From: Octopus sinensis
Taxonomy: Eukaryota
Direction: 5' to 3'
Assembly (NCBI RefSeq): GCF_006345805.1
Contig: NW_021832868.1
Coordinates: forward strand, 28,793-92,792
DNA: 64,000 nt
Below, one piece after another: positions 1 through 38,541 of the stretch; the first letter of the stretch is position 1, and each line of letters opens with the position of its first letter. The notes beneath the pieces were generated by a model that worked only from the letters and a program-made list of their open reading frames with translations, made no database searches and had not been told where the DNA came from. The position numbers and the translations under genes are program-made.

Positions 1-865
1 GCCGAACACTAGATGTAATTAGAGCTAATGGAGGATATAATGGATATTAAATAAATTTGTTCATTTTTTTGGGTTCTGAATTATCAATGAATGGAAAACC
101 GTATAAATATAATATTTTTTAGACAAACTAAAAAATAAAGCAAAACTTTATTTAATGTTTTAAATCGATAGAAGTTATTTTTTAAATATTGTTTCATAGT
201 AAATTCATGAGAAAATGCCTTTTCAATTTTTATTTTTGTTCACTGTATATATTTACTATTTTTTGGGATAATTTAGCTTAAGTAAATAAATTATATTGGA
301 CTAAAAAATATTTTGCCAATGATAGAATAACACAGTATTGCGATATTTTATTTATAATTACTTCTAAACGTTTATTCGTTAATTGTGTTTGAAATTATTT
401 TGAAATTCTTTAAAAAAACTTAACTGGTTGATCTATTGTATTTCGAAAACAATATTACAAAATAACAGCGCATTATTCAAATAATTAATTTAAAGTTAAG
501 AAGTTGGTTTAGGAGTTTCTGCAGTTTTGCGAATCATAAATCCACCAGATGAAATAATAGCTTTCTGAGTTAATTCTTTTAATTCGTCGTCATTTCCAAT
601 TGCAACGACAATGTGACGTGGTTTAATTCTTCTTTTTCCACATTTTACTGCTGTATTTCCAGCAAGTTCAAGCATTTCAGCCACAGCATATTCCAATACT
701 GCGCACATATATACTGCGGCAGGAATTCCTACTCGCATTCGGGTTTCATGACGGAGACACCGGTGAATGCGTCCAACTGGAAACTGTAACCCGGCCCGAA
801 CGGATTTGCTTTTAGCCTTTGACCGTACTTTTCCTCCTTTTCCTCTTGAAGACATTATACTCTGC
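1..865. repeat. Direct segmental duplication of 6002-6864 (Tc1 3' end + spacer + H2A)
   Basis: Near-identical to 6002-6864 (offset 6001, then 6000). Identity stops 10-11 nt upstream of the H2A ATG, where LINE A1 begins. Confidence 0.95.
496..855 (-). CDS. H2A: Histone H2A, divergent (119 aa)
   Basis: [50 protein letters not shown] are H2A signatures. True ATG at 855; the ORF-track extension MFFPQSI comes from the LINE tail. Confidence 0.95.
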
Positions 866-3800
866 GGAAAAAACATTATTAGTTAAGGGAGTTAAAAACT
901 AACTAAGTAGACCTTCGGCATCGCTGCCTTTTCAGTCTCCATCTCACACACGCCTCCCTACACACAACCACAGGTTAAGACTTACCGCCTTACCTGCCAT
1001 CCAGAAATAATCTTCTCTAGGACCTCAGAGAGGCCTTTGAGAGATGATTCCTGGGCGTCGGAGAGCTCAGTCCGGAATCCTAAGCCATAGGCTAGCCTTA
1101 TGGCTCGTCTTCTTACTTTTTTAAGCACGTCAACATGCTTATCCCTGTCCTCATAGAGGTACCAAGCGTGGACGCCATAGGTCAAGACGGGTAACACCAT
1201 GGCGTTAAACACGCGGAACCAGGCACCTCTGCTCAAGCGGAAAGCACGCAACGCACCTAATCGCTGCATTGCACGCATTTTCGTACGTGCAATGTGATCA
1301 TCAAACTTACCGGACGGCTTAAAGAGCACGCCCAAATAAGTCATCCGATCAACTGCAGCGATTGCTGACCCGCTCAGCAATAACCTAGGAACAAAATTAG
1401 TGTAACCCCTCGTCCTTTTACAGACTTTAAGGACACTGCACTTGTCCGCGCACATTCTCAGACCCCTACTCCCACACCAGTTTGCAAGTCCATCCACAGC
1501 AACCTGAAGCCTACGACACGCACACTCGGTTTCATTGAGTGATCCCAGAGGATAATGTCGTCTGCATAGATTACCATTTCAGTACGAGCATTGACTGGCA
1601 TAGGCGCAGTGGCCATAAACACATTGAATAGTGTCGGACTGAGCACAGAGCCCTGAGGGACCCCGCGAAGGACTGTTGCGACTTTAGAAAAGACCCCCTG
1701 ATGCCGCACGACCTGCCTGCGAGATTCAAGAAACCCCGACAGCCAGCGCCTTAGACACGGAGAAACCCCACACGTGGCAAGGGAACTCCGGAGGCCGTCG
1801 TGCCACACCGAGTCGAAGGCCTTTTCAATGTCGAGACTAACTAAAATACCGCATTCCCTTTTCTGGAGGGCGTTCTTCATACCAGACGACACCTTGTGAA
1901 GGCAGTCCCCGCATGAGCGGCCCTCCCTGAAGCCCCATTGGAACTCAGGGAGGGCGTCTGCAACCATCAGCTCCTCCAGGAGCCTTTGGTGCATAATTCT
2001 TTCTAGGATTTTAGATATTGCGGGGAGCAAGGAAATGGGCCTATATCCCCCGGGGACATCATGTGGCTTCCCGGGCTTTCCGATAAGGATTACCTCAGCC
2101 ACTTTCCACCTGGAGGGAATCATCCCAAGTCGCAAGCTCCCGTTAAATAAAACCTTTAGTGCAGTGATTAACCGCGGCGGGGCCTTCTTAAAGATGGCCA
2201 TCGGGATCCGATCCAAACCCGCCGCGGTGTTCTTACTTCGGGAGATTGCTGCCAGAATCTCCGCTTCAGTAATTTCGCCTGCATCGTTCCTTGATATGCC
2301 CAGCTGGCAGCGCTTGTCCCACGACAATATCTGCTGGACAGTATCAAAGGACGATGTCTCTACGAACTGACCTCCGTCAGTTCCCGAGATGCCATTGAGA
2401 TGGGCTGAAAGTATTTCAACCACCTCAACCGGGTCCGAAGCGAGGTTTCCATCAGAGCGTTTAAGGCGCACTGACTTAGCCCCCCTTCTCCCCGACAGGC
2501 TCTTCAACTGCTTCCAGAAGTCCGGAAAGCGAGGGTCCACCCTTCGGCAGGCCCTCTCCCACCGCGAACTTTCGAGTTCGCGGATTTCTCTTCGGATCTC
2601 CCTCTGAAGCCGGCTAATCCAGCCACGAAACCAAACACGGTTCTCCTCGTAAATGCATTTGTCCCGTAGTCTGGATAGCCGGCGCTTGAACCTAATTTTA
2701 TTTAAGATCCGGTGAGGGAGCGTGGAATGTGACTGACCCTGCACTGAGTTCTGTTTGAAATTATCTCGCATGTAATCAGTCAGGGCAGCATTGATTCCAT
2801 TATCAAGCGCCTCCAACTCACGTATGTTGGCGCAGGTATTCCCCACCAGAAGTGAGGGCAACCTGCTGGCCATGAAACTCTCCAGGTTAGCCCAGGAACC
2901 CACCCGGAGGTCAAAGTATCCTGGGACCCTTTGAGGAACTGGCTCACGGAGTTCGTGCAATAGAGGCAGATGGTCGCTCCCAATATCGGGCAATAAAATA
3001 GTTTTACTAACCCAATTTAGAAGACCGGGACTGACCAGAGCAAGCCCTAGCCAGTCACGTCCTCCCCTCGCGTCGACGTGGTTTGGCTCGCTCGAAGTCC
3101 GGATTTCCAGCCCGAGGTCTTCAACCAGCGTCTTCAGAGCCAAACCATGCGAGTTGGTTACCCTGAAACCAAGATCTTGATGCTTGGCATTCAGGTCCCC
3201 AACAACCATGGCCTTCGGATGCTTTTCAAAGAACTCCCGTACGTGCCAGGAGCACGCCGTAAAGTTCTTCGAGTACATCCCACCTAGGTAAAATGTTAAC
3301 TCGCCTATGCGAATTCTCACTTGGAGGAATTCACACAAGCTACATGAACATATACCTGGACTCTGCAAGGCAAGGTAGGGCTTGTAGAAGAGGCTAGTTC
3401 CTGTGCCACATATTGACCCCTGTTTCCAGGGTATGTGACGACAGTTGTAGCCATCAACTACGTACGGACCCCCCTTTACCTTCGTTTCGTTGACCACCAG
3501 AATGTCCGCACTCGTGGTGGCCAACATCCTCTGAACGGCGTCCCTTTTTCCTTCCAAGGAACGCGCGTTCACCGATATGATGTTGAGCATCATATCGGTT
3601 CTTCGCCAAGGATCTTCTTGGCCTCGGCAACGTTGCAGTGTAGCATTTCCTCTACACTGCAATTCATCTCCCTACAAAATTTTAATAGGGAAACGCATAA
3701 TTGCACCGCAGGACTAATACTGTCCTGCGGTACACGCTCGCCAGGGGCTGAGTGCAATGGCATCTCCACGTATGGAGGACGCCTTTTCAGCCCCAGGTTG

Positions 3801-5324
3801 TGCCGGACGGCGCCGCCGTTAGCCGCCTCAGAAGGCATTGCCGGCTTAGGCAACCAAGCGGACTCGGAAGCTTTCACCTGCTTTGCCAACTTTGTCGGCG
3901 AAGGCTGCACCGACCCACACGTAGCATGGCTCACAGGTTCCACTGTCTTCGCCACCCAAACGGATTTGGAAGGTTTGGCCAGTATCGCCTGCTTGCCAGG
4001 TTTTGGCGCAGGGTGCGCGACGCGACGCGGGCGACTTACTGTTGGGATTACATCCCCACCTACCTTTCGGGTTGCCTCCTTGAACTTGGGGCAACCTCTG
4101 AAGTTGGCAGTGTGTCCCAACTTACCACAGTTGACACACTGCCTCTCCTTGGATGGTGAGGGGCACGTCTTGCGACCATGCTCCCCACCGCAAATAAGGC
4201 ACTTCGCCTTATCCGGGCACTTTGTGGAGATGTGCCCGAACCCCTGACACCGAAAGCATTGGGTGGCTTTCGGGCGGGGCCAGGCAGCTCTCATCCTAAT
4301 GTAGCCGATCCTAGTACCCAGAAGTACTAGGCGCTCGGCTTCCGCAGGAGATCCCAGGATGACCTCCACCACTTCAAGAGGGCGGTTACCCTGCTTGAAG
4401 CGTGCAAGGGCAGAGGCACTGGGGTACTCCCGCTGTATGTGTCCTAAAAGGTCATTATCCTCGAAGTCCCGGGGGACCCCGAGGAGCAGGACTCTTACCT
4501 GCCTTACCTTTTGTTCAATCCTGACAAGCCGATGCATGCCAGGACCGAACGGGCTGGACTTCTCCAGCTCTCCTTTAAAGCTGAAGAAGTCCTCCTCCTT
4601 CTCCCACCCAAGCAGGAATTGGGTGGGCTCCCTCTTCAGGACTCTATACAGCTTTGAAGGCTGGATAGAGTCTAACGTACCTAAGATCTTTATGACCGAG
4701 GCCTTCCCACTTGTAGGGAGGACCTCAAGTCGTGCCACAGCACCGAAGGTAATTCTGCCCCCGGCGCCAGTGGTCTTCTTTGGGTGTGCATCCACCTGAT
4801 CGGACACACACCCAGTACCTAAAACATTAGGGGGGGTTGGACGGCCAGCCGCACGTTTGGGTTTCCCCACCGTGTACCAACCGTCCTCAAGGGCAACCTT
4901 ATTTCCTGCCGTACCCACCGGACGGCCTCAGGAGACGACACCCTGTTGGCATTAATTGACTTACCTAGGCTGGGTTTGGCACCACTAGACAAACCGCAAA
5001 CACGTGGCGAACCAGCATGCTGTGCGGTTGTCGTGGCTACCAAACAATTAGTACCTGTTGCAGCTGCTGCTCCCCCGACACCAGCCAAAGGGGCAGCAGA
5101 GGAGAAGAGTCTTCAGTGAGTGCTGAACCCATCTGGGAGGGTCCAGGCTTCGACCTCCTGCTTTGACCTAAAGAATTAAAAACACCACTAGAATAGCCGG
5201 AAGCACGTGGCGGTGAACCACGGCTCCGGCAGTTCATCGTAGTGGCACACTGAACCGTCTTGTCCTCCGGGGAGTGCGAAGCGGGAACGCCTCCACTTCT
5301 GCATAGTCTTCTTAGTGCAGACAG
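866..5324 (-). mobile_element. Non-LTR retrotransposon family A, copy A1 (full length; APE-RT with CCHC-knuckle ORF1, Jockey/I-like group)
   Basis: ORF1 with three CCHC-type knuckles, ORF2 with APE and RT, and a 3' UTR shared with the copy at 24434-24554. 3' end abuts H2A -10; 5' end is continuous with H3 codons 1-28. Confidence 0.95.
982..3593 (-). CDS. LINE A1 ORF2, APE endonuclease + reverse transcriptase (870 aa after repairing one 1-nt deletion near 1530)
   Basis: APE motifs NARSL, VVNETK, GDLNAKH, GSDHLP; RT motifs YRPISLL, FQWGFR, DIEKAFDSV, GVPQGSVLSP, YADD. 2612 nt versus 2613 for the intact B1 ORF2. Confidence 0.93.
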
Positions 5325-5408
5325 CTTGCGAGCAGATTTTGCAGACAACTGTTTCCTTGGTACTTTTGCACCAGTAGATTTTCGAGCCGTTTGTTTTGTT
5401 CTAGCCAT
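3590..5408 (-). CDS. LINE A1 ORF1 (gag-like nucleic-acid chaperone) initiating at a histone H3 ATG; ~606 aa in consensus
   Basis: CFRCQGFGHISTKC, CLICGGEHGRKTC, CVNCGKLGH knuckles. Two 1-nt C-run deletions (near 5100 and 4920) are intact in copy A2, giving one frame from MARTKQ to EEPI*. Confidence 0.85.
5325..5408 (-). other. H3: Histone H3 5' segment (codons 1-28) fused to LINE A
   Basis: MARTKQTARKSTGAKVPRKQLSAKSARK; H3 homology stops after K27. Confidence 0.95.
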
Positions 5409-5431
5409 ATTTTTTTTTTATTTCAGACAGG

Positions 5432-6051
5432 ACCTATGCCAAACATGCAATATGCTCTCGAAATATTTTGGGAGCGAGTTATTTTAAGTGATGAAAGTAA
5501 ATTTAATATGTAAAATAGTGATGTAAGAACTTTAGTATCGAGAAATCGCAAGGAAAAATATTTAACAAACAATCTTACAAAAACAGTAAAATTCGGTAAA
5601 GGAACTATCATGAACTATCATGCCATAATCAATATTGGATTTATTAATTTGGTTTTGATAAAAGAGAAGATTGGTGGAGCTTTGCATGTTAACATATTAA
5701 CGAATAATATGATCATTTCTGAACAAAATCAAACATAAAGATCCTAGTTTCCAACAAGACAATGATCTGAAACATACTTCGGCAATAGCAAAGAGCTTTT
5801 TTTCAAGTAAATAATATCGAATTACTACTATGGCCAACACAAAGCCCAGATTTAAACCCTATAGATAATGTTTGGGCCTTTATTAAAGAAAAAATCAAAA
5901 GAAGAGATTTTTGAAAAAAGAACATTTATTTGCAAAAATATCATCCATTTGGAATTAACTCAAAATAGAATACGCAAAAAGTCTTATTAATAGCATGCCA
6001 GGCCGAACACTAGATGTAATTAGAGCTAATGGAGGATATAATGGGTATTAA
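5432..6051 (+). pseudogene. Tc1/IS630-type transposase remnant
   Basis: WERVILSDESKFN, TVKFGKG, FQQDNDLKH, WPTQSPDLNPIDNVW, SMPGRTLDVIRANGGYNGY*, with stops and frameshifts; 5' part is replaced by the A1 junction. Confidence 0.88.
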
Positions 6052-6854: not shown

Positions 6855-7022
6855 TATACTCTGCTAACTATTTTTTGTTTACATAATAAAAAAATGGCAT
6901 TCCGAAATTTCGTTGAAGATTTTTTTCGGAATGGTCCTTTTTTGCATCAGTCGAAAAAAATTTGGCAATGATACTTTTTTTGCATAGGTTGAAAATAGTG
7001 TTTATTTAGAGAATTTTTCCTA
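6855..7022. promoter_or_regulatory. Bidirectional H2A-H4 promoter (168 bp)
   Basis: Lies between divergent ATGs. Carries ATTCCG/CGGAAT and (G)CAATGATACTTTTTTTGCAT motifs that recur upstream of other histone genes. Confidence 0.75.
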
Positions 7023-7463
7023 ATGTCTGGACGTGGTAAAGGTGGCAAAGGAGGAAAGAGTGGTGCAAAACGATTTCGAAAGATATTAATTGACAATATA
7101 CAAGGAATTACTAAGCCAGCAATAAGAAGACTATGTCGAAGAGGAGGTGTTCGAAGAATTTCTGGAAAAATTCATGCAATTACAAGACTGTCTCGAGGAG
7201 GACCTCTTCCCAACGAAAAGGTTCCTGATGCGGACGGTTGGCATACCGTGGGGAAACCCAAACGTGTTGCCAGCCGTTTTTAATAGTTTAGGTACTGGGT
7301 GTGTGTCTGCGCAGGTAGATGCACACCCAAAGAAGACTGCTCGCGCCGGGGGTAGAATTACCTTCGGCGTGGTGGCTAGAGAGGTCTAGTGGCCTCGGGC
7401 AAAAAGGCCTCGGTCATAAAGATCCTGGGGACGCTTGACTCTATACAGCCATCTAGGCGGTAT
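7023..7463 (+). mobile_element. Histone H4 codons 1-50 (7023-7172) fused in frame to the 5' end of LINE family B ORF1 (7173-7463)
   Basis: H4 ...[10 protein letters not shown] continues as [21 protein letters not shown], homologous to A ORF1 DGWYTVGKPKR. 7426-7463 matches the B1 sequence at 14428-14464. Confidence 0.9.
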
Positions 7464-9800: not shown

Positions 9801-10390
9801 AGTTGGATGTAGATAAGTCTCTACAGGCTTATATACAGTCAGCCCTTTCCTGACGTTTAGTCAGCAAGAGGCGCTAGACTGCACCTTCTCGAAGGTCTAC
9901 AGTGCCAGAGAAGAAAAGGAAGAAAAAGAGGAGGTGCGTGGAGTGCCACCTTCTGCTCACTTCGAAGGCTCTGGACTTAGTAAAATTACTTAGTTTCTTT
10001 TTTTAATAAAGCTAGTTAGTATATTTATGAAATTGCTAATTTTTATCTGGTTAATTTGTAAGGAATATCAATGTATTTTATTAAAAAAATTATGTATAAT
10101 TTATCCACCAAATCCGTAAATTGTCCTACCTTGACGTTTCAAGGCATTAACAACGTCCATTGCGATAACAGTTTTTCTTTTGGCATGCTCAGTGTAAGAA
10201 ATACAATCACGAACAGTTTGCTCAATAAAAATCTTAAGGACAGAACGTGTCTCCTCGTAAATTTTTCCAGAAATTCTTCGAACACCCCCTCTTCGACATA
10301 GTCTTCTTATTGCTGGCTTAGTAATTCCTTGTATATTGTCAATTAATATCTTTCGAAATCGTTTTGCACCACTCTTTCCTCCTTTGCCCC
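9720..10390. repeat. Inverted segmental duplicate of ~19040-19790 (H4 + 3' flank + RTE remnant)
   Basis: Near-identical reverse complement. Confidence 0.9.
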
Positions 10391-10406
10391 TTACCACGTC
10401 CAGACT
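10101..10406 (-). CDS. H4: Histone H4 (start codon damaged, CCTAATGTCT > CCTAGTCT, plus small indels)
   Basis: [48 protein letters not shown]. Confidence 0.9.
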
Positions 10407-10551
10407 AGGAAAAATTCTCTAAATTGGAAAATTTTTATTTAATAATTAATTAGAGAGGCTGTTAGTGAGGTAACATAAGGAGACCTTCGGCATTCCTGCG
10501 TTTTCGGTCCAGCACACACGCTCGCCTCTCTACACAACCACAGGTTAGGAC

Positions 10552-13164
10552 TTACCGTCTTACCTGCCACCCAGTCATTATCTTCTCTAGGACCTCAGGG
10601 AGGCCTTTGAGGGACAATTTTTGGGCGTTGGAGAGCTCATCACGCCATCCTAAGCCATAGGCTAGCCGGATAGCTCGTCTTCTTACTTTCTTAAGCGCGT
10701 CAACGTGCTTCTCCCTGTCCTCGCAGAAGTGCCAAGCGTGCACGCCATAGGTTAACACGGGTAACACCATGGCGTTGAACACACGGAACCAGGCACCTCT
10801 CCTCAAGTGGAAAGCACGCAACGCGCCTAATCGCTGCATTGCACGCATTTTAGTGCGTGCAATGTGATCATCGAACTTACCTGACTGCTTGAAGACCACG
10901 CCCAAGTAGGTCGTCCGATCAACTATAGCGATCGCTGACCCGTCCAGCGATAACCTAGGGATAAAATTAGTGTAACCCCTCGTCCTTTTACAGACTTTAA
11001 GGACACTGCACTTGTCCGCACACATCTTTAGACCCCTACTCCCACACCAGTGTACAAGTTCATCCACAGCAACCTGTAGCCTACGACACGCACACTCTGG
11101 TTTCATCGACTGATTCCAGAGGATAATGTCGTCTGCATAGATCACCATTTCAGTACGAGCATTGACTGGCATAGGCGCAGAGGCCATAAAGATATTAAAC
11201 AGTGTGGGACTCAGCACAGAACACTGAGGGACCCCGCGAAGGACTGTTCCGACTTTAGAAAAGACCCCCTGGTGTCGCACGACCTGACCGCGAGATTCGA
11301 GGAACCCCGACAGCCAGCGCCTTAGACACGGAGAAACCCCACACGTGGCGAGGGAACTCCGCAGGCCGTCGTGCCACACCGAGTCGAAGGCCTTTTCTAT
11401 GTCAAGACTAACTAACATACCAAACTCACTTTTCTGGAGGGCGTTCTTCATTTCGGAAGACACCTTCCACAAGCAGTCTCCACATGAACGACCCTCCCTG
11501 AAGCCCCATTGGAACTCCGGGAGGGCGTCAACCACCGTCAGCTCCTCCAGGAGCCTTCGGTGCATGATCCTTTCTAGGATTTTAGATATAGCGGGAAGCA
11601 AGGAAATGGGCCTATATCCCCCGGGGACATCATGCTGCTTCCCAGGTTTTCCAATGAGGATTACCTCAGCCACTTTCCACCTGGAAGGAATCATCCCAAG
11701 TCGCAAGCTCCCGCTAAACAAAACCTGTAAGGCCGTGATCAACAACGGCGGGGCCTTTTTGAAGATGGACATAGGGATCCGATCTAGCCCCGCCGCGGTG
11801 TTCTTACTTCGGGAGATCGCTGCCAGGATCTCCCTTTCGGAAACTTCGCCTGCATCGACCCTTGATATGTCCAGCTGGCAGCGCTTGTCCCAAGACAATA
11901 CCTCCTGGATAGTAACAAAAGACGACGTCTCTACGAACTGACTTCCGTCAGTTCCCGAGATGTTGTTGAGGTGGGTTGAAAATATATCAGCCACCTCAAC
12001 CGGGTCCGAGGCGAGGGTTCCATCAGAGCGCTTAAGGCGCACTGACTTTGCCTCCCCTCTCCCCGACAGGCTCTTCAGTTGTTTCCAGAAGTCCGGAAAG
12101 CGCGGGTCCACTCTTTGGCAGGCCCGCTCCCACCGTGAACTTTCGTGTTCACGGATTTCCCTCCGGATCTCCCTCTGAAGCCGGCTGATCCAGCCGCGAA
12201 ACCAGACACGGTTCTCCTGGTAGACGCATTTGTCCCGCAGTCTGGACAGCCGGCGCTTGAATCTAATTTTATTTAGCACCCGGTACGGGAGCGTGGAATG
12301 TGCCTGGCCCTGTACTGGGTTCTGTTTGAAATTATCTCGCATATAATCAGACAGGGCAGCATTGATTCCATTATCTAACGCCTCCAACTCTCGTATGTTG
12401 GCGCAGGTATTCCCCACCAGGAGTGAGGGCAACCTGCTGGCCATGAACCTCTCCAGGTTGGCCCAGGAACCGGACCGGAGGTCAAAGTATCCTGGGGCCC
12501 TTTGAGGAACTGGCTCACGGAGTTCGTGCAATAGAGGCAGATGGTCGCTCCCAATATCAGGCAATAAAATTGTGTTACTAACCCAATTTAGCATCCCGGG
12601 GCTGACCAGAGCAAGGCCTAGCCAGTCTTGTCCTCCCCGCGAATCGATGTGGTTTGGCTCGCTTGAAGATCTGATTTCCAACCCGAGGTCTTCAACCAGC
12701 GTCTTTAGAGCCAAACCATGCGCGTTGGTTACCCTGAAACTGAGCTCTTGGTGCTTGGCATTCAGGTCCCCAACGACCATCGCCTTCGGATGCTTTCCAA
12801 AGAACTCCCGTACGTGCCAAGAACACGCCGTAAAGTTCTTCGAATACATCGCCCCTAGGTAAAAGTTTAAATTACCTATGCGAATCCTCACTTGGAGGAA
12901 TTCACATAGGCTACAAGAACATATACCTGAGCTCCGGAGAGCAAGGTACGGCTTGTAGAAGAGGCTAGTTCCAGTGCCACATGTTGACCCCTGTTTCCAG
13001 GGTATGTGACAGCAGTTGTAGCCATCAACTACGTACCGATCCTGCTTTAACTTTGTTTCGTTGACCACCAGGATGTCCGCACTAGTGGTGGCCAACATCC
13101 TCCGAATCGCGTCTCCTTTGCCTGACAAGGAGCGCGCGTTCACCGATATGATGTTGAGCATCAT
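10552..13164 (-). CDS. LINE B1 ORF2, uninterrupted APE-RT (870 aa)
   Basis: Single ORF with all APE and RT motifs (YADD). No RNase H or C-terminal CCHC seen. Confidence 0.95.
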   Translation of the reverse strand: MMLNIISVNARSLSGKGDAIRRMLATTSADILVVNETKLKQDRYVVDGYNCCHIPWKQGSTCGTGTSLFYKPYLALRSSGICSCSLCEFLQVRIRIGNLNFYLGAMYSKNFTACSWHVREFFGKHPKAMVVGDLNAKHQELSFRVTNAHGLALKTLVEDLGLEIRSSSEPNHIDSRGGQDWLGLALVSPGMLNWVSNTILLPDIGSDHLPLLHELREPVPQRAPGYFDLRSGSWANLERFMASRLPSLLVGNTCANIRELEALDNGINAALSDYMRDNFKQNPVQGQAHSTLPYRVLNKIRFKRRLSRLRDKCVYQENRVWFRGWISRLQREIRREIREHESSRWERACQRVDPRFPDFWKQLKSLSGRGEAKSVRLKRSDGTLASDPVEVADIFSTHLNNISGTDGSQFVETSSFVTIQEVLSWDKRCQLDISRVDAGEVSEREILAAISRSKNTAAGLDRIPMSIFKKAPPLLITALQVLFSGSLRLGMIPSRWKVAEVILIGKPGKQHDVPGGYRPISLLPAISKILERIMHRRLLEELTVVDALPEFQWGFREGRSCGDCLWKVSSEMKNALQKSEFGMLVSLDIEKAFDSVWHDGLRSSLATCGVSPCLRRWLSGFLESRGQVVRHQGVFSKVGTVLRGVPQCSVLSPTLFNIFMASAPMPVNARTEMVIYADDIILWNQSMKPECACRRLQVAVDELVHWCGSRGLKMCADKCSVLKVCKRTRGYTNFIPRLSLDGSAIAIVDRTTYLGVVFKQSGKFDDHIARTKMRAMQRLGALRAFHLRRGAWFRVFNAMVLPVLTYGVHAWHFCEDREKHVDALKKVRRRAIRLAYGLGWRDELSNAQKLSLKGLPEVLEKIMTGWQVRR

Positions 13165-14464
13165 ATCGGCTCCTCACCAAGAAACTTCTTGGCCTCGGCA
13201 TAGTTGCGGCGTAGCATATCCGCTACGCTGCACTTCATCTCCCTACAAAGTGTTATCAGGCGTATACATAACTCCACCGCAGGACTAACACTGTCCTGCG
13301 GCTCACGCTCGCAAGGGGGTGAGTGCAATGGCATCTCCACGTATGGAGGAAGCCTTTTCGCCCCCAGGTTTTGCTGGGTGGTGTCACCTGTAGCCGATTC
13401 GGAGGGCATCGCAGGCTTCGGCATCCGAGCTGACTCGGATGCTTCCACCCGCTTTGCCGGCTTTGTCGGCGACGGCGGAACCGACCCGCTAGCAATGTGG
13501 CTAGCAGGCTTCGCCACCCAAGCGGACTTGGGAGGTTTGGCCTGCTTTGCCTGTTTGCCAGGTTGTGGAGCGGGGGCCGCGACGCTGGGGGTGCGGTGGC
13601 TTGCAGGCATCACAGGCTTCGCCACGCAAGCGGACTTGGGAGGTTTGGCCTGCTTTGCTTGTTTGCCAGGTTTTGGCGCTGGGGCCGCGACGCTAGGGGT
13701 GCGGTGGCTTGCAGGCTTCACAGGCCTCGCCACCCAAGCGGACTTGGGAGGTTTGGCCTGCTTTACCTGTTTGCCGGTTGGTTGCGCGGGGGCCGCGACG
13801 CTAGGGGGGCGACTTACCTTCGGGATTACATCCCCACCAACCTGTCGGGTTGCCTCCTTGAACTTACGACAACCCTTGAAGTTGGCAGTGTGTCCTAACT
13901 TACCACAGTTGACACACTGCCTCACCATAGGTGGTGAGGGGCATGTCTTGCGATCATGCTTCCCACCGCAGATTAGGCATTTCGCCTTCTCCGGACACTT
14001 CGTGCTTATGTGTCCGAACCCCTGACACCGAAAGCATTGGGTGGCTTTCGGGCGGGGCCGGACAGCACGAAGCCTGACGTAGCCGATCCTAGTACCCAGA
14101 AGTACTAGGCGCTCGGCTTCCGCAGGAGATCCCAGGATGACCTCCACCACTTCAAGAGGGCGGTTACCCTGCTTGAAGCGTGCAAGGGCAGAGGCACTGG
14201 GGTACTCCCGCTGTATGTGTCCTAAAAGGTCATTATCCTCGAAGTCCCGGGGGACCCCGAGGAGCAGGACTCTTACCTGCCTTACCTTTCGTTCAATCCT
14301 GACAAGCCGATGCATGCCAGGACCGAACGGGCTGGACTTCTCCAGCTCTCCTTTAAAGCTGAAGAAGTCCTCCTCCTTCTCCCACCCAAGCAGGAATTGG
14401 GTGGGCTCCCTCTTCAGGACTCTATACCGCCTAGATGGCTGTATAGAGTCAAGCGTCCCCAGGA
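13161..14464 (-). CDS. LINE B1 ORF1, 5'-truncated; CCHC knuckles and Ala/Lys/Pro-rich repeats
   Basis: CFRCQGFGH, CLICGGKH, CVNCGKLGH; ends EEPI* overlapping the ORF2 ATG. Confidence 0.9.
13507..13810. repeat. Three tandem 108-bp (36-aa) units in B ORF1
   Basis: Unit starts at 13507, 13615 and 13723; also present in B2 (~18070-18370). Confidence 0.9.
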
Positions 14465-14469
14465 GTTTA

Positions 14470-14988: not shown

Positions 14989-17900
14989 GGAGGAGGAAAA
15001 TTTTTATTTAATAATTAATTAGAGAGGCTGTTAGTGAGGTAACATAAGGAGACCTTCGGCATTCCTGCCTTTTCGGTCCAGCACACACGCTCGCCTCTCT
15101 ACACAACCACAGGTTAGGACTTACCGTCTTACCTGCCACCCAGTCATTATCTTCTCTAGGACCTCAGGGAGGCCTTTGAGGGACAATTCCTGGGCGTTGG
15201 AGAGCTCATCACGCCATCCTAAGCCATAGGCTAGCCGGATAGCTTGTCTTCTTACTTTCTTAAGCGCGTCAACGTGCTTCTCCCTGTCCTCGCAGAAGTG
15301 CCAAGCGTGCACGCCATAGGTTAACACGGGTAACACCATGGCGTTGAACACACGGAACCAGGCACCTCTCCTCAAGTGGAAAGCACGCAACGCGCCTAAT
15401 CGCTGCATTGCACGCATTTTAGTGCGTGCAATGTGATCATCGTACTTACCTGACTGCTTGAAGACCACGCCCAAGTAGGTCGTCCGATCAACTATAGCGA
15501 TCGCTGACCCGTCCAGCGATAACCTAGGGATAAAATTAGTGTAACCCCTCGTCCTTTTACAGACTTTAAGGACACTGCACTTGTCCGCACACATCTTTAG
15601 ACCCCTACTCCCACACCAGTGTACAAGTTCATCCACAGCAACCTGTAGCCTACGACACGCACACTCTGGTTTCATCGACTGATTCCAGAGGATAATGTCG
15701 TCTGCATAGATCACCATTTCAGTACGAGCATTGACTGGCATAGGCGCAGAGGCCATATAGATATTAAACAGTGTGGGACTCAGCACAGAACACTGAGGGA
15801 CCCCGCGAAGGACTGTTCCGACTTTAGAAAAGACCCCCTGGTGTCGCACGACCTGACCGCGAGATTCGAGGAACCCCGACAGCCAGCGCCTTAGACACGG
15901 AGAAACCCCACACGTGGCGAGGGAACTCCGCAGGCCGTCGTGCCACACCGAGTCGAAGGCCTTTTCTATGTCAAGACTAACTAACATACCAAACTCACTT
16001 TTCTGGAGGGCGTTCTTCATTTCGGAAGACACCTTCCACAAGCAGTCTCCACATGAACGACCCTCCCTGAAGCCCCATTGGAACTCCGGGAGGGCGTCAA
16101 CCACCGTCAGCTCCTCCAGGAGCCTTCGGTGCATGATCCTTTCTAGGATTTTAGATATAGCGGGAAGCAAGGAAATGGGCCTATATCCCCCGGGGACATC
16201 ATGCTGCTTCCCAGGTTTTCCAATGAGGATTACCTCAGCCACTTTCCACCTGGAAGGAATCATCCCAAGTCGCAAGCTCCCGCTAAACAAAACCTGTAAG
16301 GCCGTGATCAACAACGGCGGGGCCTTTTTGAAGATGGACATAGGGATCCGATCTAGCCCCGCCGCGGTGTTCTTACTTCGGGAGATCGCTGCCAGGATCT
16401 CCCTTTCGGAAACTTCGCCTGCATCGACCCTTGATATGTCCAGCTGGCAGCGCTTGTCCCAAGACAATACCTCCTGGATAGTAACAAAAGACGACGTCTC
16501 TACGAACTGACTTCCGTCAGTTCCCGAGATGTTGTTGAGGTGGGTTGAAAATATATCAGCCACCTCAACCGGGTCCGAGGCGAGGGTTCCATCAGAGCGC
16601 TTAAGGCGCACTGACTTTGCCTCCCCTCTCCCCGACAGGCTCTTCAGTTGTTTCCAGAAGTCCGGAAAGCGCGGGTCCACTCTTTGGCAGGCCCGCTCCC
16701 ACCGTGAACTTTCGTGTTCACGGATTTCCCTCCGGATCTCCCTCTGAAGCCGGCTGATCCAGCCGCGAAACCAGACACGGTTCTCCTGGTAGACGCATTT
16801 GTCCCGCAGTCTGGACAGCCGCGCTTGAATCTAATTTTATTTAGCACCCGGTACGGGAGCGTGGAATGTGCCTGGCCCTGTACTGGGTTCTGTTTGAAAT
16901 TATCTCGCATATAATCAGACAGGGCAGCATTGATTCCATTATCTAACGCCTCCAACTCTCGTATGTTGGCGCAGGTATTCCCCACCAGGAGTGAGGGCAA
17001 CCTGCTGGCCATGAACCTCTCCAGGTTGGCCCAGGAACCGGACCGGAGGTCAAAGTATCCTGGGGCCCTTTGAGGAACTGGCTCACGGAGTTCGTGCAAT
17101 AGAGGCAGATGGTCGCTCCCAATATCAGGCAATAAAATTGTGTTACTAACCCAATTTAGCATCCGGGGCTGACCAGAGCAAGGCCTAGCCAGCCTTGTCC
17201 TCCCCGCGAATCGATGTGGTTTGGCTCGCTTGAAGATCTGATTTCCAACCCGAGGTCTTCAACCAGCGTCTTTAGAGCCAACCATGCGCGTTGGTTACCC
17301 TGAAACCGAGCTCTTGGTGCTTGGCATTCAGGTCCCCAACGACCATCGCCTTCGGATGCTTTCCAAAGAACTCCCGTACGTGCCAAGAACACGCCGTAAA
17401 GTTCTTCGAATACATCGCCCCTAGGTAAAAAGTTAAATTACCTATGCGAATCCTCACTTGGAGGAATTCACATAGGCTACAAGAACATATACCTGAGCTC
17501 CGGAGAGCAAGGTACGGCTTGTAGAAGAGGCTAGTTCCAGTGCCACATGTTGACCCCTGTTTCCAGGGTATGTGACAGCAGTTGTAGCCATCAACTACGT
17601 ACCGATCCTGCTTTAACTTTGTTTCGTTGACCACCAGGATGTCCGCACTAGTGGTGGCCAACATCCTCCGAATCGCGTCTCCTTTGCCTGACAAGGAGCG
17701 CGCGTTCACCGATATGATGTTGAGCATCATATCGGCTCCTCACCAAGGAACTTCTTGGCCTCGGCATAGTTGCGGCGTAGCATATCTGCTACGCTGCACT
17801 TCATCTCCTCACAAAGTGTTATCAGGCGTATACATAACTCCACCGCAGGACTAACACTGTCCTGCGGCTCACGCTCGCAAGGGGGTGAATGCAGTGGCAT

Positions 17901-18928
17901 CTCCACGTATGGAGGAAGCCTTTTCGCCCCCAGGTTTTGCTGGGCGGTGTCACCTGTAGCCGACTCGGAAGGCATCGCAGGCTTCGGCATCCGAGCTGAC
18001 TCGGATGCTTTCACCCGCTTTGCCGGCTTTGTCGGCGACGGCGGTACCGACCCGCTAGCAATGTGGCTCGCAGGCTTCGCCACCCAAGCGGACTTGGGAG
18101 GTTTGGCCTGCTTTGCCTGTTTGCTAGGTTGTGGAGCGGGGGCCGCGATGCTGGGGGTGCGGTGGCTTGCAGGCATCACAGGCTTCGCCACGCAAGCGGA
18201 CTTGGGAGGTTTGGCCTGCTTTGCTTGTTTGCCAGGTTTTTGCGCTTGGGCCGCGACGCTAGGGGTGCGGTGGCTTGCAGGCTTCACAGGCCTCGCCACC
18301 CAAGCGGACTTGGGAGGTTTGGCCTGATTTACCTGTTTGCCGGTTGGTTGCGCGGGGGCCGCGACGCTAGGGGGGCGACTTACCTTCGGGATTACATCCC
18401 CACCAACCTGTCGGGTTGCCTCCTTGAACTTACGACAACCCTTGAAGTTGGCAGTGTGTCCTAACTTACCACAGTTGACACACTGCCTCACCATAGGTTG
18501 TGAGGGGCATGTCTTGCGACCATGCTACCCACCGCAGATTAGGCATTTCGCCTTCTCCGGACACTTCGTGCTTATGTGTCCGAACCCCTGACACCGAAAG
18601 CATTGGGTGGCTTTCGGGCGGGGCCGGACAGCACGTCAAGAGGGCGGTTACCCTGCTTAAAGCGTGCTAGGGCAGAGGCACTGGGGTACTCCCGCTGTAT
18701 GTGTCCTAAAAGGTCATTATCCTCGAAGTCCCGGGGGACCCCGAGGAGCAGGACTCTTACCTGCCTTACCTTTCGTTCAATCCTGACAAGCCGATGCATG
18801 CCAGGACCGAACGGGCTTGACTTCTCCAGCTCTCCTTTAAAGTTAAAGAAGTCCTCCTCCTTCTCCCACCCAAGCAGGAATTGGGTGGGCTCCCTCTTCA
18901 GGACTCTATACCGCCTAGATGGCTGTAT
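14989..18928 (-). mobile_element. LINE family B, copy B2 (5'-truncated, frameshifted, ~80-bp ORF1 deletion near 18633)
   Basis: Near-identical to B1. Ends in a (TCC)3 tail 80 nt upstream of the H3-like ATG; 5' break joins the H4 promoter. Confidence 0.95.
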
Positions 18929-19018
18929 GGTCCTTTTTTGCATCAGTCGAAAAAAATTTGGCAATGATACTTTTTTTGCATAGGTTGAAAATAGTGTTTA
19001 TTTAGAGAATTTTTCCTA

Positions 19019-19326: not shown

Positions 19327-20014
19327 ATTATACATAATTTTTTTAATAAAATACATTGATATTCCTTACAAATTAACCAGATAAAAATTAGCAATTTCAT
19401 AAATATACTAACTAGCTTTATTAAAAAAAGAAACTAAGTAATTTTACTAAGTCCAGAGCCTTCGAAGTGAGCAGAAGGTGGCACTCCACGCACCTCCTCT
19501 TTTTCTTCCTTTTCTTCTCTGGCACTGTAGACCTTCGAGAAGGTGCAGTCTAGCGCCTCTTGCTGACTAAACGTCAGGAAAGGGCTGACTGTATATAAGC
19601 CTGTAGAGACTTATCTACATCCAACTGTCTTAAGTACCGCTTGTGGTATTTGGTGACCAGTTCATCCCATGTCATCACACACAGTTCTTGAAAGGGATCT
19701 CAAACTTCATGGCAAAAGTTTCAAAAACTGGGACGACCTAAAATCTTTGCGGGATTTCGCCCGCAACAGAGGGGCATGGACGAGCAAGGAACAGAAGATT
19801 GTTTTGCTTGTGACACGTGTCGGATTATAACTTTGTTAATGTTCCTACGGAATGTATTATAATAATAATTTCCTCATGACATTAACTAATTTATAACTTT
19901 CCGTTTACTTATTGTTTTATTTATTAAGAAATATTTTAATTATCTACTATTACAAATTATCCTCTCAAAAAATTCGGAATGCTACTTTTAAAAAAATTTT
20001 GGAAATAAAAAAAA

Positions 20015-23000
20015 ATGGCTAGAACAAAACAAACGGCTCGAAATCTACTGGTGCAAAAGTACCAAGGAAACAGTTGTCTGCAAAATCTGCTCGCAAGCTG
20101 TCTGCACTAAGAAGACTATGCAGAAGTGGAGGCGTTCCCGCTTCGCACTCCCCGGAGGACAAGACGGTTCAGTGTGCCACTACGATGAACTGCCGGAGCC
20201 GTGGTTCACCGCCACGTGCTTCCGGCTATTATGTGGTGTTTAATTCTTTAGGTCAAAGCAGGAGGTCGAAGCCTGGACCCTCCCAGATGGGTTCAGCACT
20301 CACTGAAGACTCTTCTCCCTCTGCTCCCCCTTTGGCTGGTGTCGGGGGAGCAGCAGCTGCAACAGGTACTAATTGTTTGGTAGCACGACAACCGCACAGC
20401 ATGCTGGTTCGCCACGTGTTTGCGGTTTGTCTAGTGGTGCCAAACCCAGCCTAGGTAAGTCAATTAATGCCAACAGGGTGTCGTCTCCTGAGGCCGTCCC
20501 GGTGGGTACGGCAGGAAATAAGGTTGCCCTTGAGGACGGTTGGTACACGGTGGGGAAACCCAAACGTGCGGCTGGCCGTCCAACCCCCCCTAATGTTTTA
20601 GGTACTGGGTGTGTGTCCGATCAGGTGGATGCACACCCAAAGAAGACCACTGGCGCCGGGGGCAGAATTACCTTCGGTGCTGTGGCACGACTTGAGGTCC
20701 TCCCTACAAGTGGGAAGGCCTCGGTCATAAAGATCTTAGGTACGTTAGACTCTATCCAGCCTTCAAAGCTGTATAGAGTCCTGAAGAGGGAGCCCACCCA
20801 ATTCCTGCTTGGGTGGGAGAAGGAGGAGGACTTCTTCAGCTTTAAAGGAGAGCTGGAGAACAGCCCGTTCGGTCCTGGCATGCATCGGCTTGTCAGGATT
20901 GAACAAAGGTAAGGCAGGTAAGAGTCCTGCTCCTCGGGGTCCCCCGGGACTTCGAGGATAATGACCTTTTAGGACACATACAGCGGGAGTACCCCAGTGC
21001 CTCTGCCCTTGCACGCTTCAAGCAGGGTAACCGCCCTCTTGAAGTGGTGGAGGTCATCCTGGGATCTCCTGCGGAAGCCGAGCGCCTAGTACTTCTGGTA
21101 CTAGGATCGGCTACATTAGGATGAGAGCTGCCTGGCCCCGCCCGAAAGCCACCCAATGCTTTCGGTGTCAGGGGTTCGGGCACATCTCCACAAAGTGCCC
21201 GGATAAGGCGAAGTGCCTTATTTGCGGTGGGGAGCATGGTCGCAAGACGTGCCCCTCACCATCCAAGGAGAGGCAGTGTGTCAACTGTGGTAAGTTGGGA
21301 CACACTGCCAACTTCAGAGGTTGCCCCAAGTTCAAGGAGGCAACCCGAAAGGTAGGTGGGGATGTAATCCCAACAGTAAGTCGCCCGCGTCGCGTCGCGC
21401 GCCCTGCGCCAAAACCTGGCAAGCAGGCGATACTGGCCAAACCTTCCAAATCCGTTGGGTGGCGAAGACAGTGGAACCGTGAGCCATGCTACGTGTGGGT
21501 CGGTGCAGCCTTCGCCGACAAAGTTGGCAAAGCAGGTGAAAGCTTCCGAGTCCGCTTGGTTGCCTAAGCCGGCAATGCCTTCTGAGGCGGCTAACGGCGG
21601 CGCCGTCCGGCACACCTGGGGCTGAAAAGGCGTCCTCCATACGTGGAGATGCCATTGCACTCAGCCCCTGGCGAGCGTGTACCGCAGGACAGTATTAGTC
21701 CTGCGGTGCAATTATGCGTTTCCCTATTAAAATTTTGTAGGGAGATGAATTGCAGTGTAGAGGAAATGCTACACTGCAACGTTGCCGAGGCCAAGAAGAT
21801 CCTTGGCGAAGAACCGATATGATGCTCAACATCATATCGGTGAACGCGCGTTCCTTGGAAGGAAAAAGGGACGCCGTTCAGAGGATGTTGGCCACCACGA
21901 GTGCGGACATTCTGGTGGTCAACGAAACGAAGGTAAAGGGGGGTCCGTACGTAGTTGATGGCTACAACTGTCGTCACATACCCTGGAAACAGGGGTCAAT
22001 ATGTGGCACAGGAACTAGCCTCTTCTACAAGCCCTACCTTGCCTTGCAGAGTCCAGGTATATGTTCATGTAGCTTGTGTGAATTCCTCCAAGTGAGAATT
22101 CGCATAGGCGAGTTAACATTTTACCTAGGTGGGATGTACTCGAAGAACTTTACGGCGTGCTCCTGGCACGTACGGGAGTTCTTTGAAAAGCATCCGAAGG
22201 CCATGGTTGTTGGGGACCTGAATGCCAAGCATCAAGATCTTGGTTTCAGGGTAACCAACTCGCATGGTTTGGCTCTGAAGCGCTGGTTGAAGACCTCGGG
22301 CTGGAAATCCGGACTTCGAGCGAGCCAAACCACGTCGACGAGGGGGAGGGGACGTGACTGGCTAGGGCTTGCTCTGGTCAGTCCCGGTCTTCTAAATTGG
22401 GTTAGTAAAACTATTTTATTGTCCGATATTGGGAGCGACCATCTGCCTCTATTGCACGAACTCCGTGAGCCAGTTCCTCAAAGGGTCCCAGGATACTTTG
22501 ACCTCCGGGTGGGTTCCTGGGCTAACCTGGAGAGTTTCATGGCCAGCAGGTTGCCCTCACTTCTGGTGGGGAATACCTGCGCCAACATACGTGAGTTGGA
22601 GGCGCTTGATAATGGAATCAATGCTGCCCTGACTGATTACATGCGAGATAATTTCAAACAAACTCAGTGCAGGGTCAGGCACATTCCACGCTCCCTCACC
22701 GGATCTTAAATAAAATTAGGTTCAAGCGCCGGCTATCCAGACTACGGGACAAATGCGTTTACGAGGAGAACCGTGTTTGGTTTCGTGGCTGGATTAGCCG
22801 GCTTCAGAGGGAGATCCGAAGAGAAATCCGCGAACTCGAAAGTTCGCGGTGGGAGAGGGCCTGCCGAAGGGTGGACCCTCGCTTTCCGGACTTCTGGAAG
22901 CAGTTGAAGAGCCTGTCGGGGAGAAGGGGGGCTAAGTCAGTGCGCCTTAAACGCTCTGATGGAACCCTCGCTTCGGACCCGGTTGAGGTGGTTGAAATAC

Positions 23001-37700: not shown

Positions 37701-38541
37701 ACCCCTGACACCGAAAGCATTGGGTGGCTTTCGGGCGGGGCCAGGCAGCTCTCATCCTAATGTAGCCGATCCTGGTACCAAGAAGTACCAGACGCTCGGC
37801 TTCTGCAGGAGATCCCAGTGTAATCTCCACCACTTCAAGAGGGCGATTACCCTGCTTGAAGCGTGCAATGGCAGAGGCACTGGGGTACTCCTGCTGCAGA
37901 TGACCTAGGAGGTCATTATCCTCGAAGTCCCGAGGAACCCCGAGGAGGAGGACACTTACCTTACTTACCTTACGTTCGATCCTGACAAGGCGATGCATGC
38001 CAGGACCGAACGGATTTGACTTCTCCAGCTCCCCTTTGAAGTTGGAGAAGTCATCCTCCTTCTCCCACCCAAGCAGGAATTGGGTGGGCTCCCTCTTCAG
38101 GACTCTATACAGCTTTGAAGGCTGGATAGAGTCTAACGTACCTAAGATCTTTATGACCGAGGCCTTCCCACTTGTAGGGAGGACCTCAAGTCGTGCCACA
38201 GCACCGAAGGTAATTCTGCCCCCGGCGCCAGTGGTCTTCTTTGGGTGTGCATCCACCTGATCGGACACACACCCAGTACCTAAAACATTAGGGGGGGTTG
38301 GACGGCCAGCCGCACGTTTGGGTTTCCCCACCGTGTACCAACCGTCCTCAAGGGCAACCTTATTTCCTGCCGTACCCACCGGGACGGCCTCAGGAGACGA
38401 CACCCTGTTGGCATTAATTGACTTACCTAGGCTGGGTTTGGTACCACTAGACAAACCGCAAACACGTGGCGAACCAGCATGCTGTGCGGTTGTGGTGGAT
38501 ACCAAACGATCAGAACCAGTTGCACCTGCAGCTCCTATCAT
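34722..38541 (-). mobile_element. Chimeric LINE: family B 3' half and family A 5' half, with a ~0.4-kb RT deletion at 35153
   Basis: Diagnostic SNPs switch from B to A between 36282 and 36311; third-variant patch at ~37770-38050. 3' junction is the same as B1. Confidence 0.9.

What the first reader, a model, noticed from the sequence alone, without database searches (positions are those of the whole stretch)
5285..5318. A decayed H4 fragment is stacked directly behind the H3 tail in family A (possible record of target switching)
Seen: GCACTAAGAAGACTATGCAGAAGTGGAGGCGTTC ([11 protein letters not shown]) matches H4 7119-7152 ([11 protein letters not shown]) at 29/34 nt and is in frame. Family B has a more decayed equivalent ([10 protein letters not shown]) right after its intact H4 part. 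Inferred: the A/B ancestor targeted H4 and absorbed target sequence into its 5' end; A later moved to H3, keeping the older layer.
Basis: partly seen in the sequence, partly recalled or inferred. Interest (0 to 1): 0.76.

Follow-up and report, generated by a model that had tools for sequence, protein, structure and literature searches.

The report
Layered histone fragments heading an octopus LINE
A 34-base decayed piece of a histone H4 gene really does sit in frame behind a fresh histone H3 start in an octopus jumping gene, and it is one layer of a stack left by repeated capture of histone gene starts, which these elements use as the beginning of their own first protein.

Summary
The minus strand of 5285-5318 matches host H4 codons 33-44 at 28-29 of 34 bases, in frame; 0 of 5000 shuffles reach this score.

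The host is Octopus sinensis. The element is an endonuclease plus reverse-transcriptase LINE living in a cluster of divergent histone genes. Its ORF1 starts at a captured histone ATG. The consensus of five family A copies is open from the H3 ATG through the relic into ORF1. A related copy carries an intact 513-aa H4(1-53)-ORF1 fusion.

The H3 head travels with the element: four A copies have four unrelated 5' flanks.

Stacking is general:
- A: H3 codons 1-28, then H3 21-23, then H4 33-44.
- B: H4 1-50, then H4 33-41.
- E1: H2B, then H3 14-24, then H4 33-44, with the H4 piece repeated.
- E2: H2B, then H3 5-15.

"Target switching" is only partly supported. The 3' ends of these elements lie 10-90 bases upstream of the ATG of H2A, H2B, H3 and H4 alike. 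The H3|H4 junction is shared with family E, whose ORF2 is only 37-45% identical. So what changes is the head, and heads seem to be exchanged between families.

I found no description of this in the literature searched.

The parts
5285..5318 (-). Decayed H4 fragment (codons 33-44, [11 protein letters not shown]), in frame inside the ORF1 leader of element A1.
   Evidence: It matches host H4 at 28-29/34, and 0 of 5000 shuffles reach the score.
5316..5324 (-). CTGTCTGCA, a relic of H3 codons 21-23 (LSA). It is an intermediate layer, and its GCA is shared with the first codon of the H4 relic.
   Evidence: In the alignment with family E1, a 30-base H3 piece (codons 14-24) runs straight into the H4 relic. 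Family A differs from E1 by a 24-base insertion.
5325..5408 (-). Fresh H3 head: the ATG plus codons 1-28.
   Evidence: It is 84/84 identical to host H3 in L003. It is also identical between A sublineages that differ by 5-9% in every other segment.
5409..5432 (-). Leader derived from the H3 5'UTR. This is the 5' end of element A1.
   Evidence: Homology to native H3 upstream sequence ends about 24 bases before the ATG, and a mariner-like fragment lies beyond it.
5160..5284 (-). A-specific coding linker behind the relic. Its origin is unknown.
   Evidence: It is found only in A copies. It shows no significant similarity to the leaders of other families.
868..5424 (-). Element A1, a LINE with the order head, leader, ORF1 (three CCHC knuckles), ORF2 (APE endonuclease plus reverse transcriptase), and a 3' tail ending ...TTTTTTCC. 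It carries frameshifts.
   Evidence: Self-comparison of the window, Pfam hits on the near-identical family C, and the translation.
856..919 (-). The 3' end of A1 and its junction. The tail abuts GCAGAGTATA, 10 bases upstream of the H2A ATG at 855.
20002..24547 (+). Element A2, 99% identical to A1 and carrying the same relic at 20104-20137. Both its 5' and 3' flanks differ from those of A1.
7023..7172 (+). Family B head: H4 ATG plus codons 1-50, sitting behind the native H2A-H4 divergent promoter.
   Evidence: It is 149/150 identical to host H4. The promoter block 6931-7172 is 98.8% identical to 18927-19167.
7176..7201 (+). Family B's older H4 relic (codons 33-41, AITRLSRGG).
   Evidence: It matches at 21/26, in frame, and 2 of 5000 shuffles reach the score. 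The collinear reading as a continuation of H4 is rejected.
7202..7463 (+). The rest of the family B leader ([11 protein letters not shown]..., LGTGCVSAQVDAHPKKT...). It is homologous to the A leader and is cut off by another transposon.
35153..38541 (-). Element A3, a 5'-truncated A copy with an intact 496-aa ORF1 that starts at a non-histone ATG.
40567..40698 (-). Family E2 head: H2B codons 1-11 (40668-40698) stacked on an H3 relic of codons 5-15 (40567-40599).
   Evidence: blastn-short against the host histone coding sequences; both pieces are in frame.
10426..14459 (-). Element C1 (87% identical to A), 5'-truncated, with an intact ORF1 of 384 aa and ORF2 of 870 aa. Its 3' tail abuts H4 22 bases upstream of the ATG position; that ATG itself is lost in this copy.
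14995..18928 (-). Element C2, 99% identical to C1. Its 3' tail lies 87 bases upstream of an H3 ATG. Its 5' end lies in the H2A-H4 promoter block.
10101..10391 (-). A host H4 copy with its ATG lost. It shows the source sequence of the relic.

Best explanation
The segment is a real, partly decayed piece of the host's own divergent H4 gene (codons 33-44). It now forms part of the coding leader of a LINE.

In this group of LINEs, ORF1 is not translated from an ATG of its own. It starts at a captured histone gene start: a few bases of 5'UTR, the ATG, and the first 11 to 53 codons. That head is transcribed and retrotransposed as part of the element.

Heads are replaced repeatedly. A copy that has lost the front of its old head becomes joined, in frame, to the 5' part of another histone sequence. 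Whatever was left of the earlier head stays behind the new one as an internal relic and drifts.

Family A therefore reads, from front to back: H3 codons 1-28 (top layer), H3 codons 21-23 (middle), H4 codons 33-44 (bottom).

Shown here:
- the histone origin, reading frame and order of the layers;
- the open H3-relic-ORF1 frame;
- mobility of the head;
- stacking in four lineages.

Inferred:
- the way layers are joined, either 5'-end joining inside a histone gene or inside another element's head, or a template switch by the reverse transcriptase onto a histone mRNA;
- what the head provides, namely a translation start and possibly a promoter.
For: - H4 origin: 28-29/34 identity, 0 of 5000 shuffles reach the score, in frame. 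The relic has Cys at the position where this host's H4 differs from canonical H4.
- Translated head: the majority consensus of five A copies is one open frame from the H3 ATG through the relic into ORF1. The genomic copy at L001:1672 has an intact 513-aa H4(1-53)-ORF1 reading frame. An E1 copy has an intact 463-aa ORF1 that starts in its head.
- Head carried by the element: A1, A2, A_L002 and A_L004 have four unrelated 5' flanks. Homology to H3 starts 10-24 bases upstream of the ATG.
- Repeated replacement: the bodies of A and H4A are 96% identical but carry an H3 head and an H4 head respectively.
- Layer maps, all in frame: A is H3/H3/H4; B is H4/H4; E1 is H2B/H3/H4 plus a repeat; E2 is H2B/H3.
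- Older layers are more diverged: the heads are 99-100% identical to the host genes and the relics 81-90%.
- Distant relatives without histone association have no such motif at their ORF1 N-termini.
Against: - No copy was found that still sits in an H3 gene with the rest of H3 following it, so the capture step itself was not observed.
- Every head with an open frame except E2 contains an H4 33-44-like stretch, which leaves room for a functional motif rather than a passive relic.
- The relic is far more similar between A and E than their bodies are. That requires either exchange of 5' modules between families or selection.
- The identity of the H3 head to the host gene may reflect gene conversion rather than recent capture, so percent identity is an unreliable clock.
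- Only about 170 kb from one assembly was examined, and some copies show single-base indels that may be assembly errors.
Confidence: 0.7

Rival explanations
1. Literal target switching. An H4-specific element absorbed target sequence, and its descendant A changed insertion specificity to H3. On this view the H3 piece is target flank, or was recently derived from it.
For: The order of layers, fresh H3 in front of decayed H4, fits this. Family B lies in a native H4 promoter context.
Against: No A copy is followed by the remainder of H3. A1's 3' end abuts H2A, and A2's abuts a truncated E element. A-type 3' tails are found upstream of H4, H3, H2A and H2B-type leaders, and C-type tails upstream of H4 and H3. 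The four A copies have unrelated 5' flanks. H4A, which nests within A diversity, carries an H4 head again.
Confidence: 0.15
2. The H4-like stretch is a functional module and not a fossil. It was taken from H4 once and has been kept by selection in ORF1, for example to engage histone chaperones or import factors, or to bind nucleic acid. This would explain why it is shared across families.
For: It is in frame in A, B and E1, where it occurs twice. In A1, 4 of the 6 differences from H4 are synonymous (my count on the sequences). Heads made of native H4 (B, H4A) also contain this stretch. A and E keep it although their bodies share only 30-45% amino-acid identity.
Against: Most changes in E1a and B alter the peptide, and B has lost a codon. 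E2 lacks the stretch. A3 has an intact ORF1 without any head. C1's ORF1 of 384 aa starts at an internal ATG. There are too few sites for a real dN/dS test.
Confidence: 0.12
3. The similarity is due to chance or convergence. On this view an arginine- and glycine-rich basic stretch merely resembles H4.
For: The match is short, only 34 bases.
Against: 0 of 5000 shuffles reach the score. Identity extends to synonymous positions. The same H4 codons recur in B and E1. In E1 the stretch is directly preceded by a 30-base H3 match at 27/30.
Confidence: 0.01

Closest known systems
Target-specific non-LTR retrotransposons of multicopy genes: R1 and R2 in 28S rDNA, the Tx1-clade elements Keno and Mutsu in snRNA and 5S genes, and SLACS/CZAR/NeSL in spliced-leader genes.
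   Same: The elements live inside a tandem multigene cluster. They have a fixed orientation and recurrent junction positions relative to the host gene. The element begins with host-gene sequence, and transcription from the host promoter is likely.
   Different: The host genes here are protein-coding Pol II histone genes. The 3' junctions lie upstream of the coding sequence and leave it intact. Several different histone genes are used. The host coding sequence is fused in frame to ORF1. Flanks are usually not contiguous, so these are not simple insertions. Membership of the RT in any of those clades was not tested; the best database hits are at most 29% identical.
Serial replacement of 5' ends in mammalian L1 (my knowledge: Khan, Smit and Boissinot 2006), and L1 chimeras with U6 and other RNAs formed by template switching (PMC4476161; bioRxiv 10.1101/2025.02.02.635956, listed).
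   Same: Closely related bodies carry unrelated 5' modules. New 5' ends are recruited repeatedly. Chimeras form at the 5' end of the cDNA.
   Different: Here the recruited modules are coding, in frame and translated. They come from one gene family, the histones. Remnants of earlier modules persist as a readable stack.
Capture of host protein domains by retrotransposons, for example the methyl-CpG-binding domain in an arthropod family (de Mendoza et al. 2019, cited within PMC9476566).
   Same: Host coding sequence becomes part of a transposon protein.
   Different: Here the event is repeated and layered, and what is captured is a gene start (5'UTR, ATG and N-terminal tail) and not a folded domain.

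Membership tests
APE-type non-LTR retrotransposon (LINE) | ORF2 carries an N-terminal apurinic-type endonuclease followed by a reverse transcriptase. | tested here: met
   Pfam hits Exo_endo_phos (1e-6), Exo_endo_phos_2 (8e-9) and RVT_1 (1e-35) on the 870-aa ORF2 of C1, which is 89% identical to A.
APE-type non-LTR retrotransposon (LINE) | ORF1 is a nucleic-acid-binding protein with CCHC knuckles. | tested here: met
   A zf-CCHC Pfam hit, and three CCHC motifs visible in the ORF1 translations.
APE-type non-LTR retrotransposon (LINE) | No terminal repeats, and variable 5' truncation with a common 3' end. | tested here: met
   Copies start at positions 1, 514, 1404, 1651, 3471, 3639, 3780 and 4137 of A1, and all end at the same 3' tail.
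Target-specific non-LTR retrotransposon | Independent copies join the host gene at the same nucleotide and in one orientation. | tested here: inconclusive
   In the de-duplicated count, 9 of 13 distinct 3' ends have a histone-type ATG within 100 bases downstream on the same strand, against about 0.013 expected per site. That count covers four A-/C-type tails at AATTTAGAG, 22 bases upstream of the H4 ATG; a fifth, in L008, is visible, where the junction reads CC|ATTTAGAG. However, the junctions are spread over four different histone genes and over positions 9 to 87 bases upstream.
Target-specific non-LTR retrotransposon | Simple insertion: the two flanks are contiguous in the empty site, with a short target duplication. 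| tested here: not met
   A1 has a mariner fragment on its 5' side and H2A on its 3' side. H4A in L001 implies a target deletion of roughly 940 bases. Tandem element-element junctions are common. No clean target duplication was found.
Target-specific non-LTR retrotransposon | The RT falls in a known site-specific clade (R1, R2/NeSL or Tx1). | not tested
   No reference RT set was available. The best database relatives are unnamed metagenome proteins at 26-29% identity.
5'-end replacement (L1-like mosaic 5' ends) | Closely related bodies carry unrelated 5' modules. | tested here: met
   The A and H4A bodies are 96% identical. Their heads are H3(1-28)+relic and H4(1-53) respectively.
5'-end replacement (L1-like mosaic 5' ends) | Older 5' sequence is retained downstream of the newer one. 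| tested here: met
   Layer maps for A, B, E1 and E2, with identity to the host genes falling from the front layer to the back.
Template-switch chimeric retrocopies (U6-L1 type) | The chimera junction lies at the exact 5' end of one RNA, with untemplated bases at the join. | tested here: inconclusive
   Heads and downstream histone genes begin 10-25 bases upstream of the ATG, and extra C-run plus GG bases often follow the upstream tail. However, the transcription start sites are not mapped. The histone genes downstream of the tails keep at least 170 bases of native 3' flank, which argues that they are genomic copies and not retrocopies.

The most novel reading that the evidence does not exclude
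A guild of at least two deeply diverged LINE families in Octopus sinensis has turned histone gene starts into exchangeable, translated heads.
- Their ORF1 proteins carry genuine histone N-terminal tails: H3 1-28, H4 1-53 and H2B 1-12.
- The head brings the translation start and possibly a core promoter.
- Because the head reproduces a histone 5' end, it is itself a landing site. Elements therefore pile up head-to-tail at the 5' ends of histone genes and swap heads, also between families.
- The stacked relics are the fossil record of that process.
Probability: 0.4. Interest if true: 0.85.

Novelty: new variant of a known kind. Interest (0 to 1): 0.68.

Why it matters
LINEs must solve two problems at every jump: how to be transcribed and how to start translation. 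They also need somewhere harmless to land.

This locus suggests one solution to all three. The elements live at the 5' ends of a multicopy histone gene set. They borrow its 5'UTR, ATG and N-terminal codons, and they re-borrow whenever the front is lost.

The stacked, in-frame relics give a readable order of events, which is rare for the 5' ends of LINEs. The conflict between shared relics and diverged bodies points to exchange of modules between families.

If the fusion proteins are made, a transposon protein carrying real H3 or H4 tails raises direct questions about nuclear import, chaperone binding and tail-modifying enzymes.

For genome annotation, it also explains why gene models here fuse LINE ORF2 ends to H4, as in the 175-aa "histone H4-like" model.

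Tried and rejected
1. B's KIHAITRLS as a diverged continuation of H4 (KIYEETRSV). Rejected: the collinear identity is 7/30, against 21/26 to codons 33-41.
2. The 125-150 bases behind A's relic as a decayed second copy of the element leader (the DGW...NVLGTG region). Only an 18-base local match appeared, reached by 5 of 3000 shuffles. The global alignment was no better than shuffles, and nhmmer with a leader profile scored no better than decoys. Not supported.
3. A ribozyme or other known RNA family in the leader. Rfam gave no match at gathering thresholds anywhere in the window.
4. Close relatives in protein databases. ORF2 hits are at most 29% identical. The ORF1 fusion query found nothing relevant. 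Exact look-ups of ORF2 and ORF1 were not on record.
5. Histone genes downstream of element tails as retrocopies of mRNAs. This is weakened because they share at least 170 bases of native 3' flank.
6. Literature searches for histone-targeting or histone-fused LINEs found nothing specific.

Full report
**What is at the coordinates.** On the minus strand an ATG at 5408 opens the frame [50 protein letters not shown].... The 34 bases at 5285-5318 match the H4 head at 7119-7152 at 29/34 and an intact H4 allele from another contig at 28/34. I aligned the 325 bases behind the H3 part against the 309-base H4 coding sequence. The observed local score was 19.0, against a shuffle mean of 8.3 and maximum of 15.5, and 0 of 5000 shuffles of either partner reached it. 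The remaining 4.1 kb of the element scores at most 13. The match keeps the H4 reading frame.

**Setting.** The window is eukaryotic: AT-rich DNA with GC-rich inserts. It holds H2A, H3 and H4 genes or gene starts, an H2B pseudogene, and several copies of a LINE. The LINE's ORF1 has CCHC knuckles, and its 870-aa ORF2 has an APE endonuclease and a reverse transcriptase. An exact look-up of the H2A protein placed the window on contig VCDQ01007429.1 of assembly GCA_006345805.1 and returned five further histone loci. The H4 protein is annotated as "histone H4-like [Octopus sinensis]". These histones are unusual. H4 is only about 77% identical to canonical H4, and a polyadenylation-type signal follows the genes.

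**The head is translated.** The majority consensus of five family A copies, taken over the 5' 1.1 kb only, is a single open frame. It runs from the H3 ATG through the relic and a roughly 250-codon leader into the known ORF1. Individual A copies carry frameshifts. A closely related subfamily, which I call H4A, gives direct evidence. L001:1672 has an uninterrupted 513-aa frame in which H4 codons 1-53 continue into RKKKPGPSHVGS...[12 protein letters not shown]... and on to the ORF1 stop. A second family, E, has an intact 463-aa ORF1 that starts in its head.

**The head is part of the mobile unit.** Four A copies have four unrelated 5' flanks: window 5408 and 20015, L002:18478 and L004:1667. Similarity to native H3 upstream sequence starts 24, 16, 19 and 10 bases before the ATG respectively. 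No A copy is followed by the rest of H3. A1's tail abuts GCAGAGTATA, 10 bases before an H2A ATG. A2's tail abuts a truncated E element.

**Stacking is general.** I matched each leader against the host histone coding sequences. All pieces listed are in frame.

| Lineage | Front layer | Behind it |
|---|---|---|
| A | H3 codons 1-28 (84/84) | CTGTCTGCA (H3 codons 21-23), then H4 33-44 (28-29/34) |
| B | H4 1-50 (149/150) | H4 33-41 (21/26; 2 of 5000 shuffles reach the score) |
| H4A | H4 1-53 (158/158) | none |
| E1 (L001:7121) | H2B 1-12 | H3 14-24 (27/30), H4 33-44 (29/33), then a second H3 19-23 + H4 33-43 |
| E2 (window 40698, minus strand) | H2B 1-11 | H3 5-15 (27/33) |

Front layers are 99-100% identical to host genes for the H3 and H4 heads (the H2B heads of E1/E2 only about 81%), and buried layers 81-90%. 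My own first reading of B, as a diverged continuation of H4, was wrong: the collinear identity is 7/30.

**An extra layer, and a link between families.** Aligning A with E1 shows that E1 reads ...CCAAGGAAACAATTGTCTACAA|TAAGAAAC... Here H3 codon 23 joins H4 codon 33 through the shared bases GCAA. Family A has 24 additional bases at that point: H3 codons 24-28 followed by a repeat of codons 21-23. The simplest order of events has three steps:
1. An H4 head.
2. A fusion of H3(1-23) to H4(33-...).
3. In the A lineage, truncation to H3 codon 21 and fusion behind codon 28 of a new H3 start.

A and E also share the AGA-to-AGT change (CRSGG where the host has CRRGG) and an 11-base match about 25 bases downstream. 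Yet the ORF2s of A and E are only 37-45% identical (RT part) and their ORF1s 30-37%. A relic that is 82-88% identical to the present host gene cannot be as old as that split. Either 5' modules pass between families, or the stretch is under selection.

**Where the elements sit.** In the de-duplicated count of 13 distinct 3' ends, 9 have a histone-type ATG within 100 bases downstream on the same strand. The expectation is about 0.013 per site. That count covers four A-/C-type tails at AATTTAGAG, 22 bases before the H4 ATG, and a fifth case (L008) appears, with CC|ATTTAGAG at the junction. Other tails lie 19-87 bases before H3, 10 bases before H2A, and at H2B-type leaders. Tails also abut the heads of other elements at those same positions, which produces tandem arrays. 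The downstream histone genes keep at least 170 bases of native 3' flank, so they are genomic genes and not retrocopies. Family A is therefore not H3-specific. Head identity and insertion site are separate matters. That these junctions coincide with transcription start sites is my inference; the start sites have not been mapped.

**Caveat on dating.** The two A sublineages differ by 5-9% in every segment. They differ at 0 of 84 bases in the H3 head, which is also identical to a host H3 gene. About 5 differences would be expected. Gene conversion by neighbouring H3 genes, or selection, may keep the top layer fresh while buried relics drift. "Fresh" therefore need not mean "recent".

**Relatives without histone association.** Two distant relatives from metagenomes, with ORF2 about 29% identical, have ORF1 N-termini without any histone-like stretch.

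**Verdict.** The relic is real and is best read as the bottom layer of a repeatedly rebuilt, translated histone head. It is not supported for the insertion target. The history is both deeper, with three layers, and less tree-like, with sharing between families, than proposed. I found no description of histone-headed or histone-cluster LINEs in the library searched.

**Limits.**
- Nine loci (about 170 kb) from one assembly were examined.
- There are no RNA data.
- The capture step itself was not observed.

Noticed in passing
L010 (scaffold DF945167.1 of the Vollenhovia emeryi ant assembly), 1-2255: A 2.2-kb ant scaffold carries a compact unit of H2A, H2B, H4 and H3 of the same divergent histone type, and it has no LINEs. 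Its H4 is 92% identical in amino acids and 78% in nucleotides to the octopus H4, so purifying selection is evident. It may be cephalopod contamination of the ant assembly, but this is untested. It would serve as an empty-site reference.
   Followed up: partly
L007:10001-10657 (protein P0065): An NCBI gene model of 175 aa, named "histone H4-like", joins the C-terminus of the LINE ORF2 to a full H4. This hints at read-through transcripts from the element into the downstream histone gene.
   Followed up: no
L004:3015-3155 (minus strand) compared with L001:1672-1830: An orphan 3' half of H4 starts at codon 54 and is joined directly to the H3-H2A spacer. The H4A head ends at codon 53. The breakpoints are complementary, yet no element lies between them.
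   Followed up: partly
window 5325-5408, L002:18478-18561 and L004:1584-1667: The H3 head is identical (0 differences in 84 bases) between A sublineages that differ by 5-9% in every other segment, and it is identical to a host H3 gene. This suggests gene conversion or selection acting on the top layer.
   Followed up: partly
window 14818-14907 (minus strand) and 28844-28900 (plus strand): Two further H3 starts (about 15 and 30 codons) are cut off by an AT-rich repeat. That repeat recurs at window 14469-14818, 28897-29309 and 38684-39198, and in other loci. It appears to be another, uncharacterised insertion into H3.
   Followed up: no
window 27966-28307; L003:3900-4290; L004:5990-6390: H2B copies at these three places are frameshifted pseudogenes, whereas H2A, H3 and H4 are often intact. 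An apparently intact H2B start (first 110 codons read) is at L008:13868.
   Followed up: partly
window 856-866, 10426-10440 and 34722-34735, and the element tails in other loci: The element 3' tail, ...AAATTTTTCC(C)n and often GG, resembles the native H4 5'UTR (GAATTTTTCCTAATG). This may reflect pairing between the RNA 3' end and the target, or a tail derived from the target.
   Followed up: no
window 5424-6000, 7435-8455, 32408-34549 and 44986-46101: Other mobile elements lie in the window: a Tc1/mariner-like fragment next to A1's 5' end, an integrase-like ORF that cuts off family B, a separate RT ORF of 713 aa, and a pogo/Tc5-type DDE transposase.
   Followed up: no
window 35153: Copy A3 is A-type on the 5' side of 35153 and C-type on the 3' side (98-99% identical to C1/C2). 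It is either a recombinant or a nested junction between the two subfamilies.
   Followed up: no
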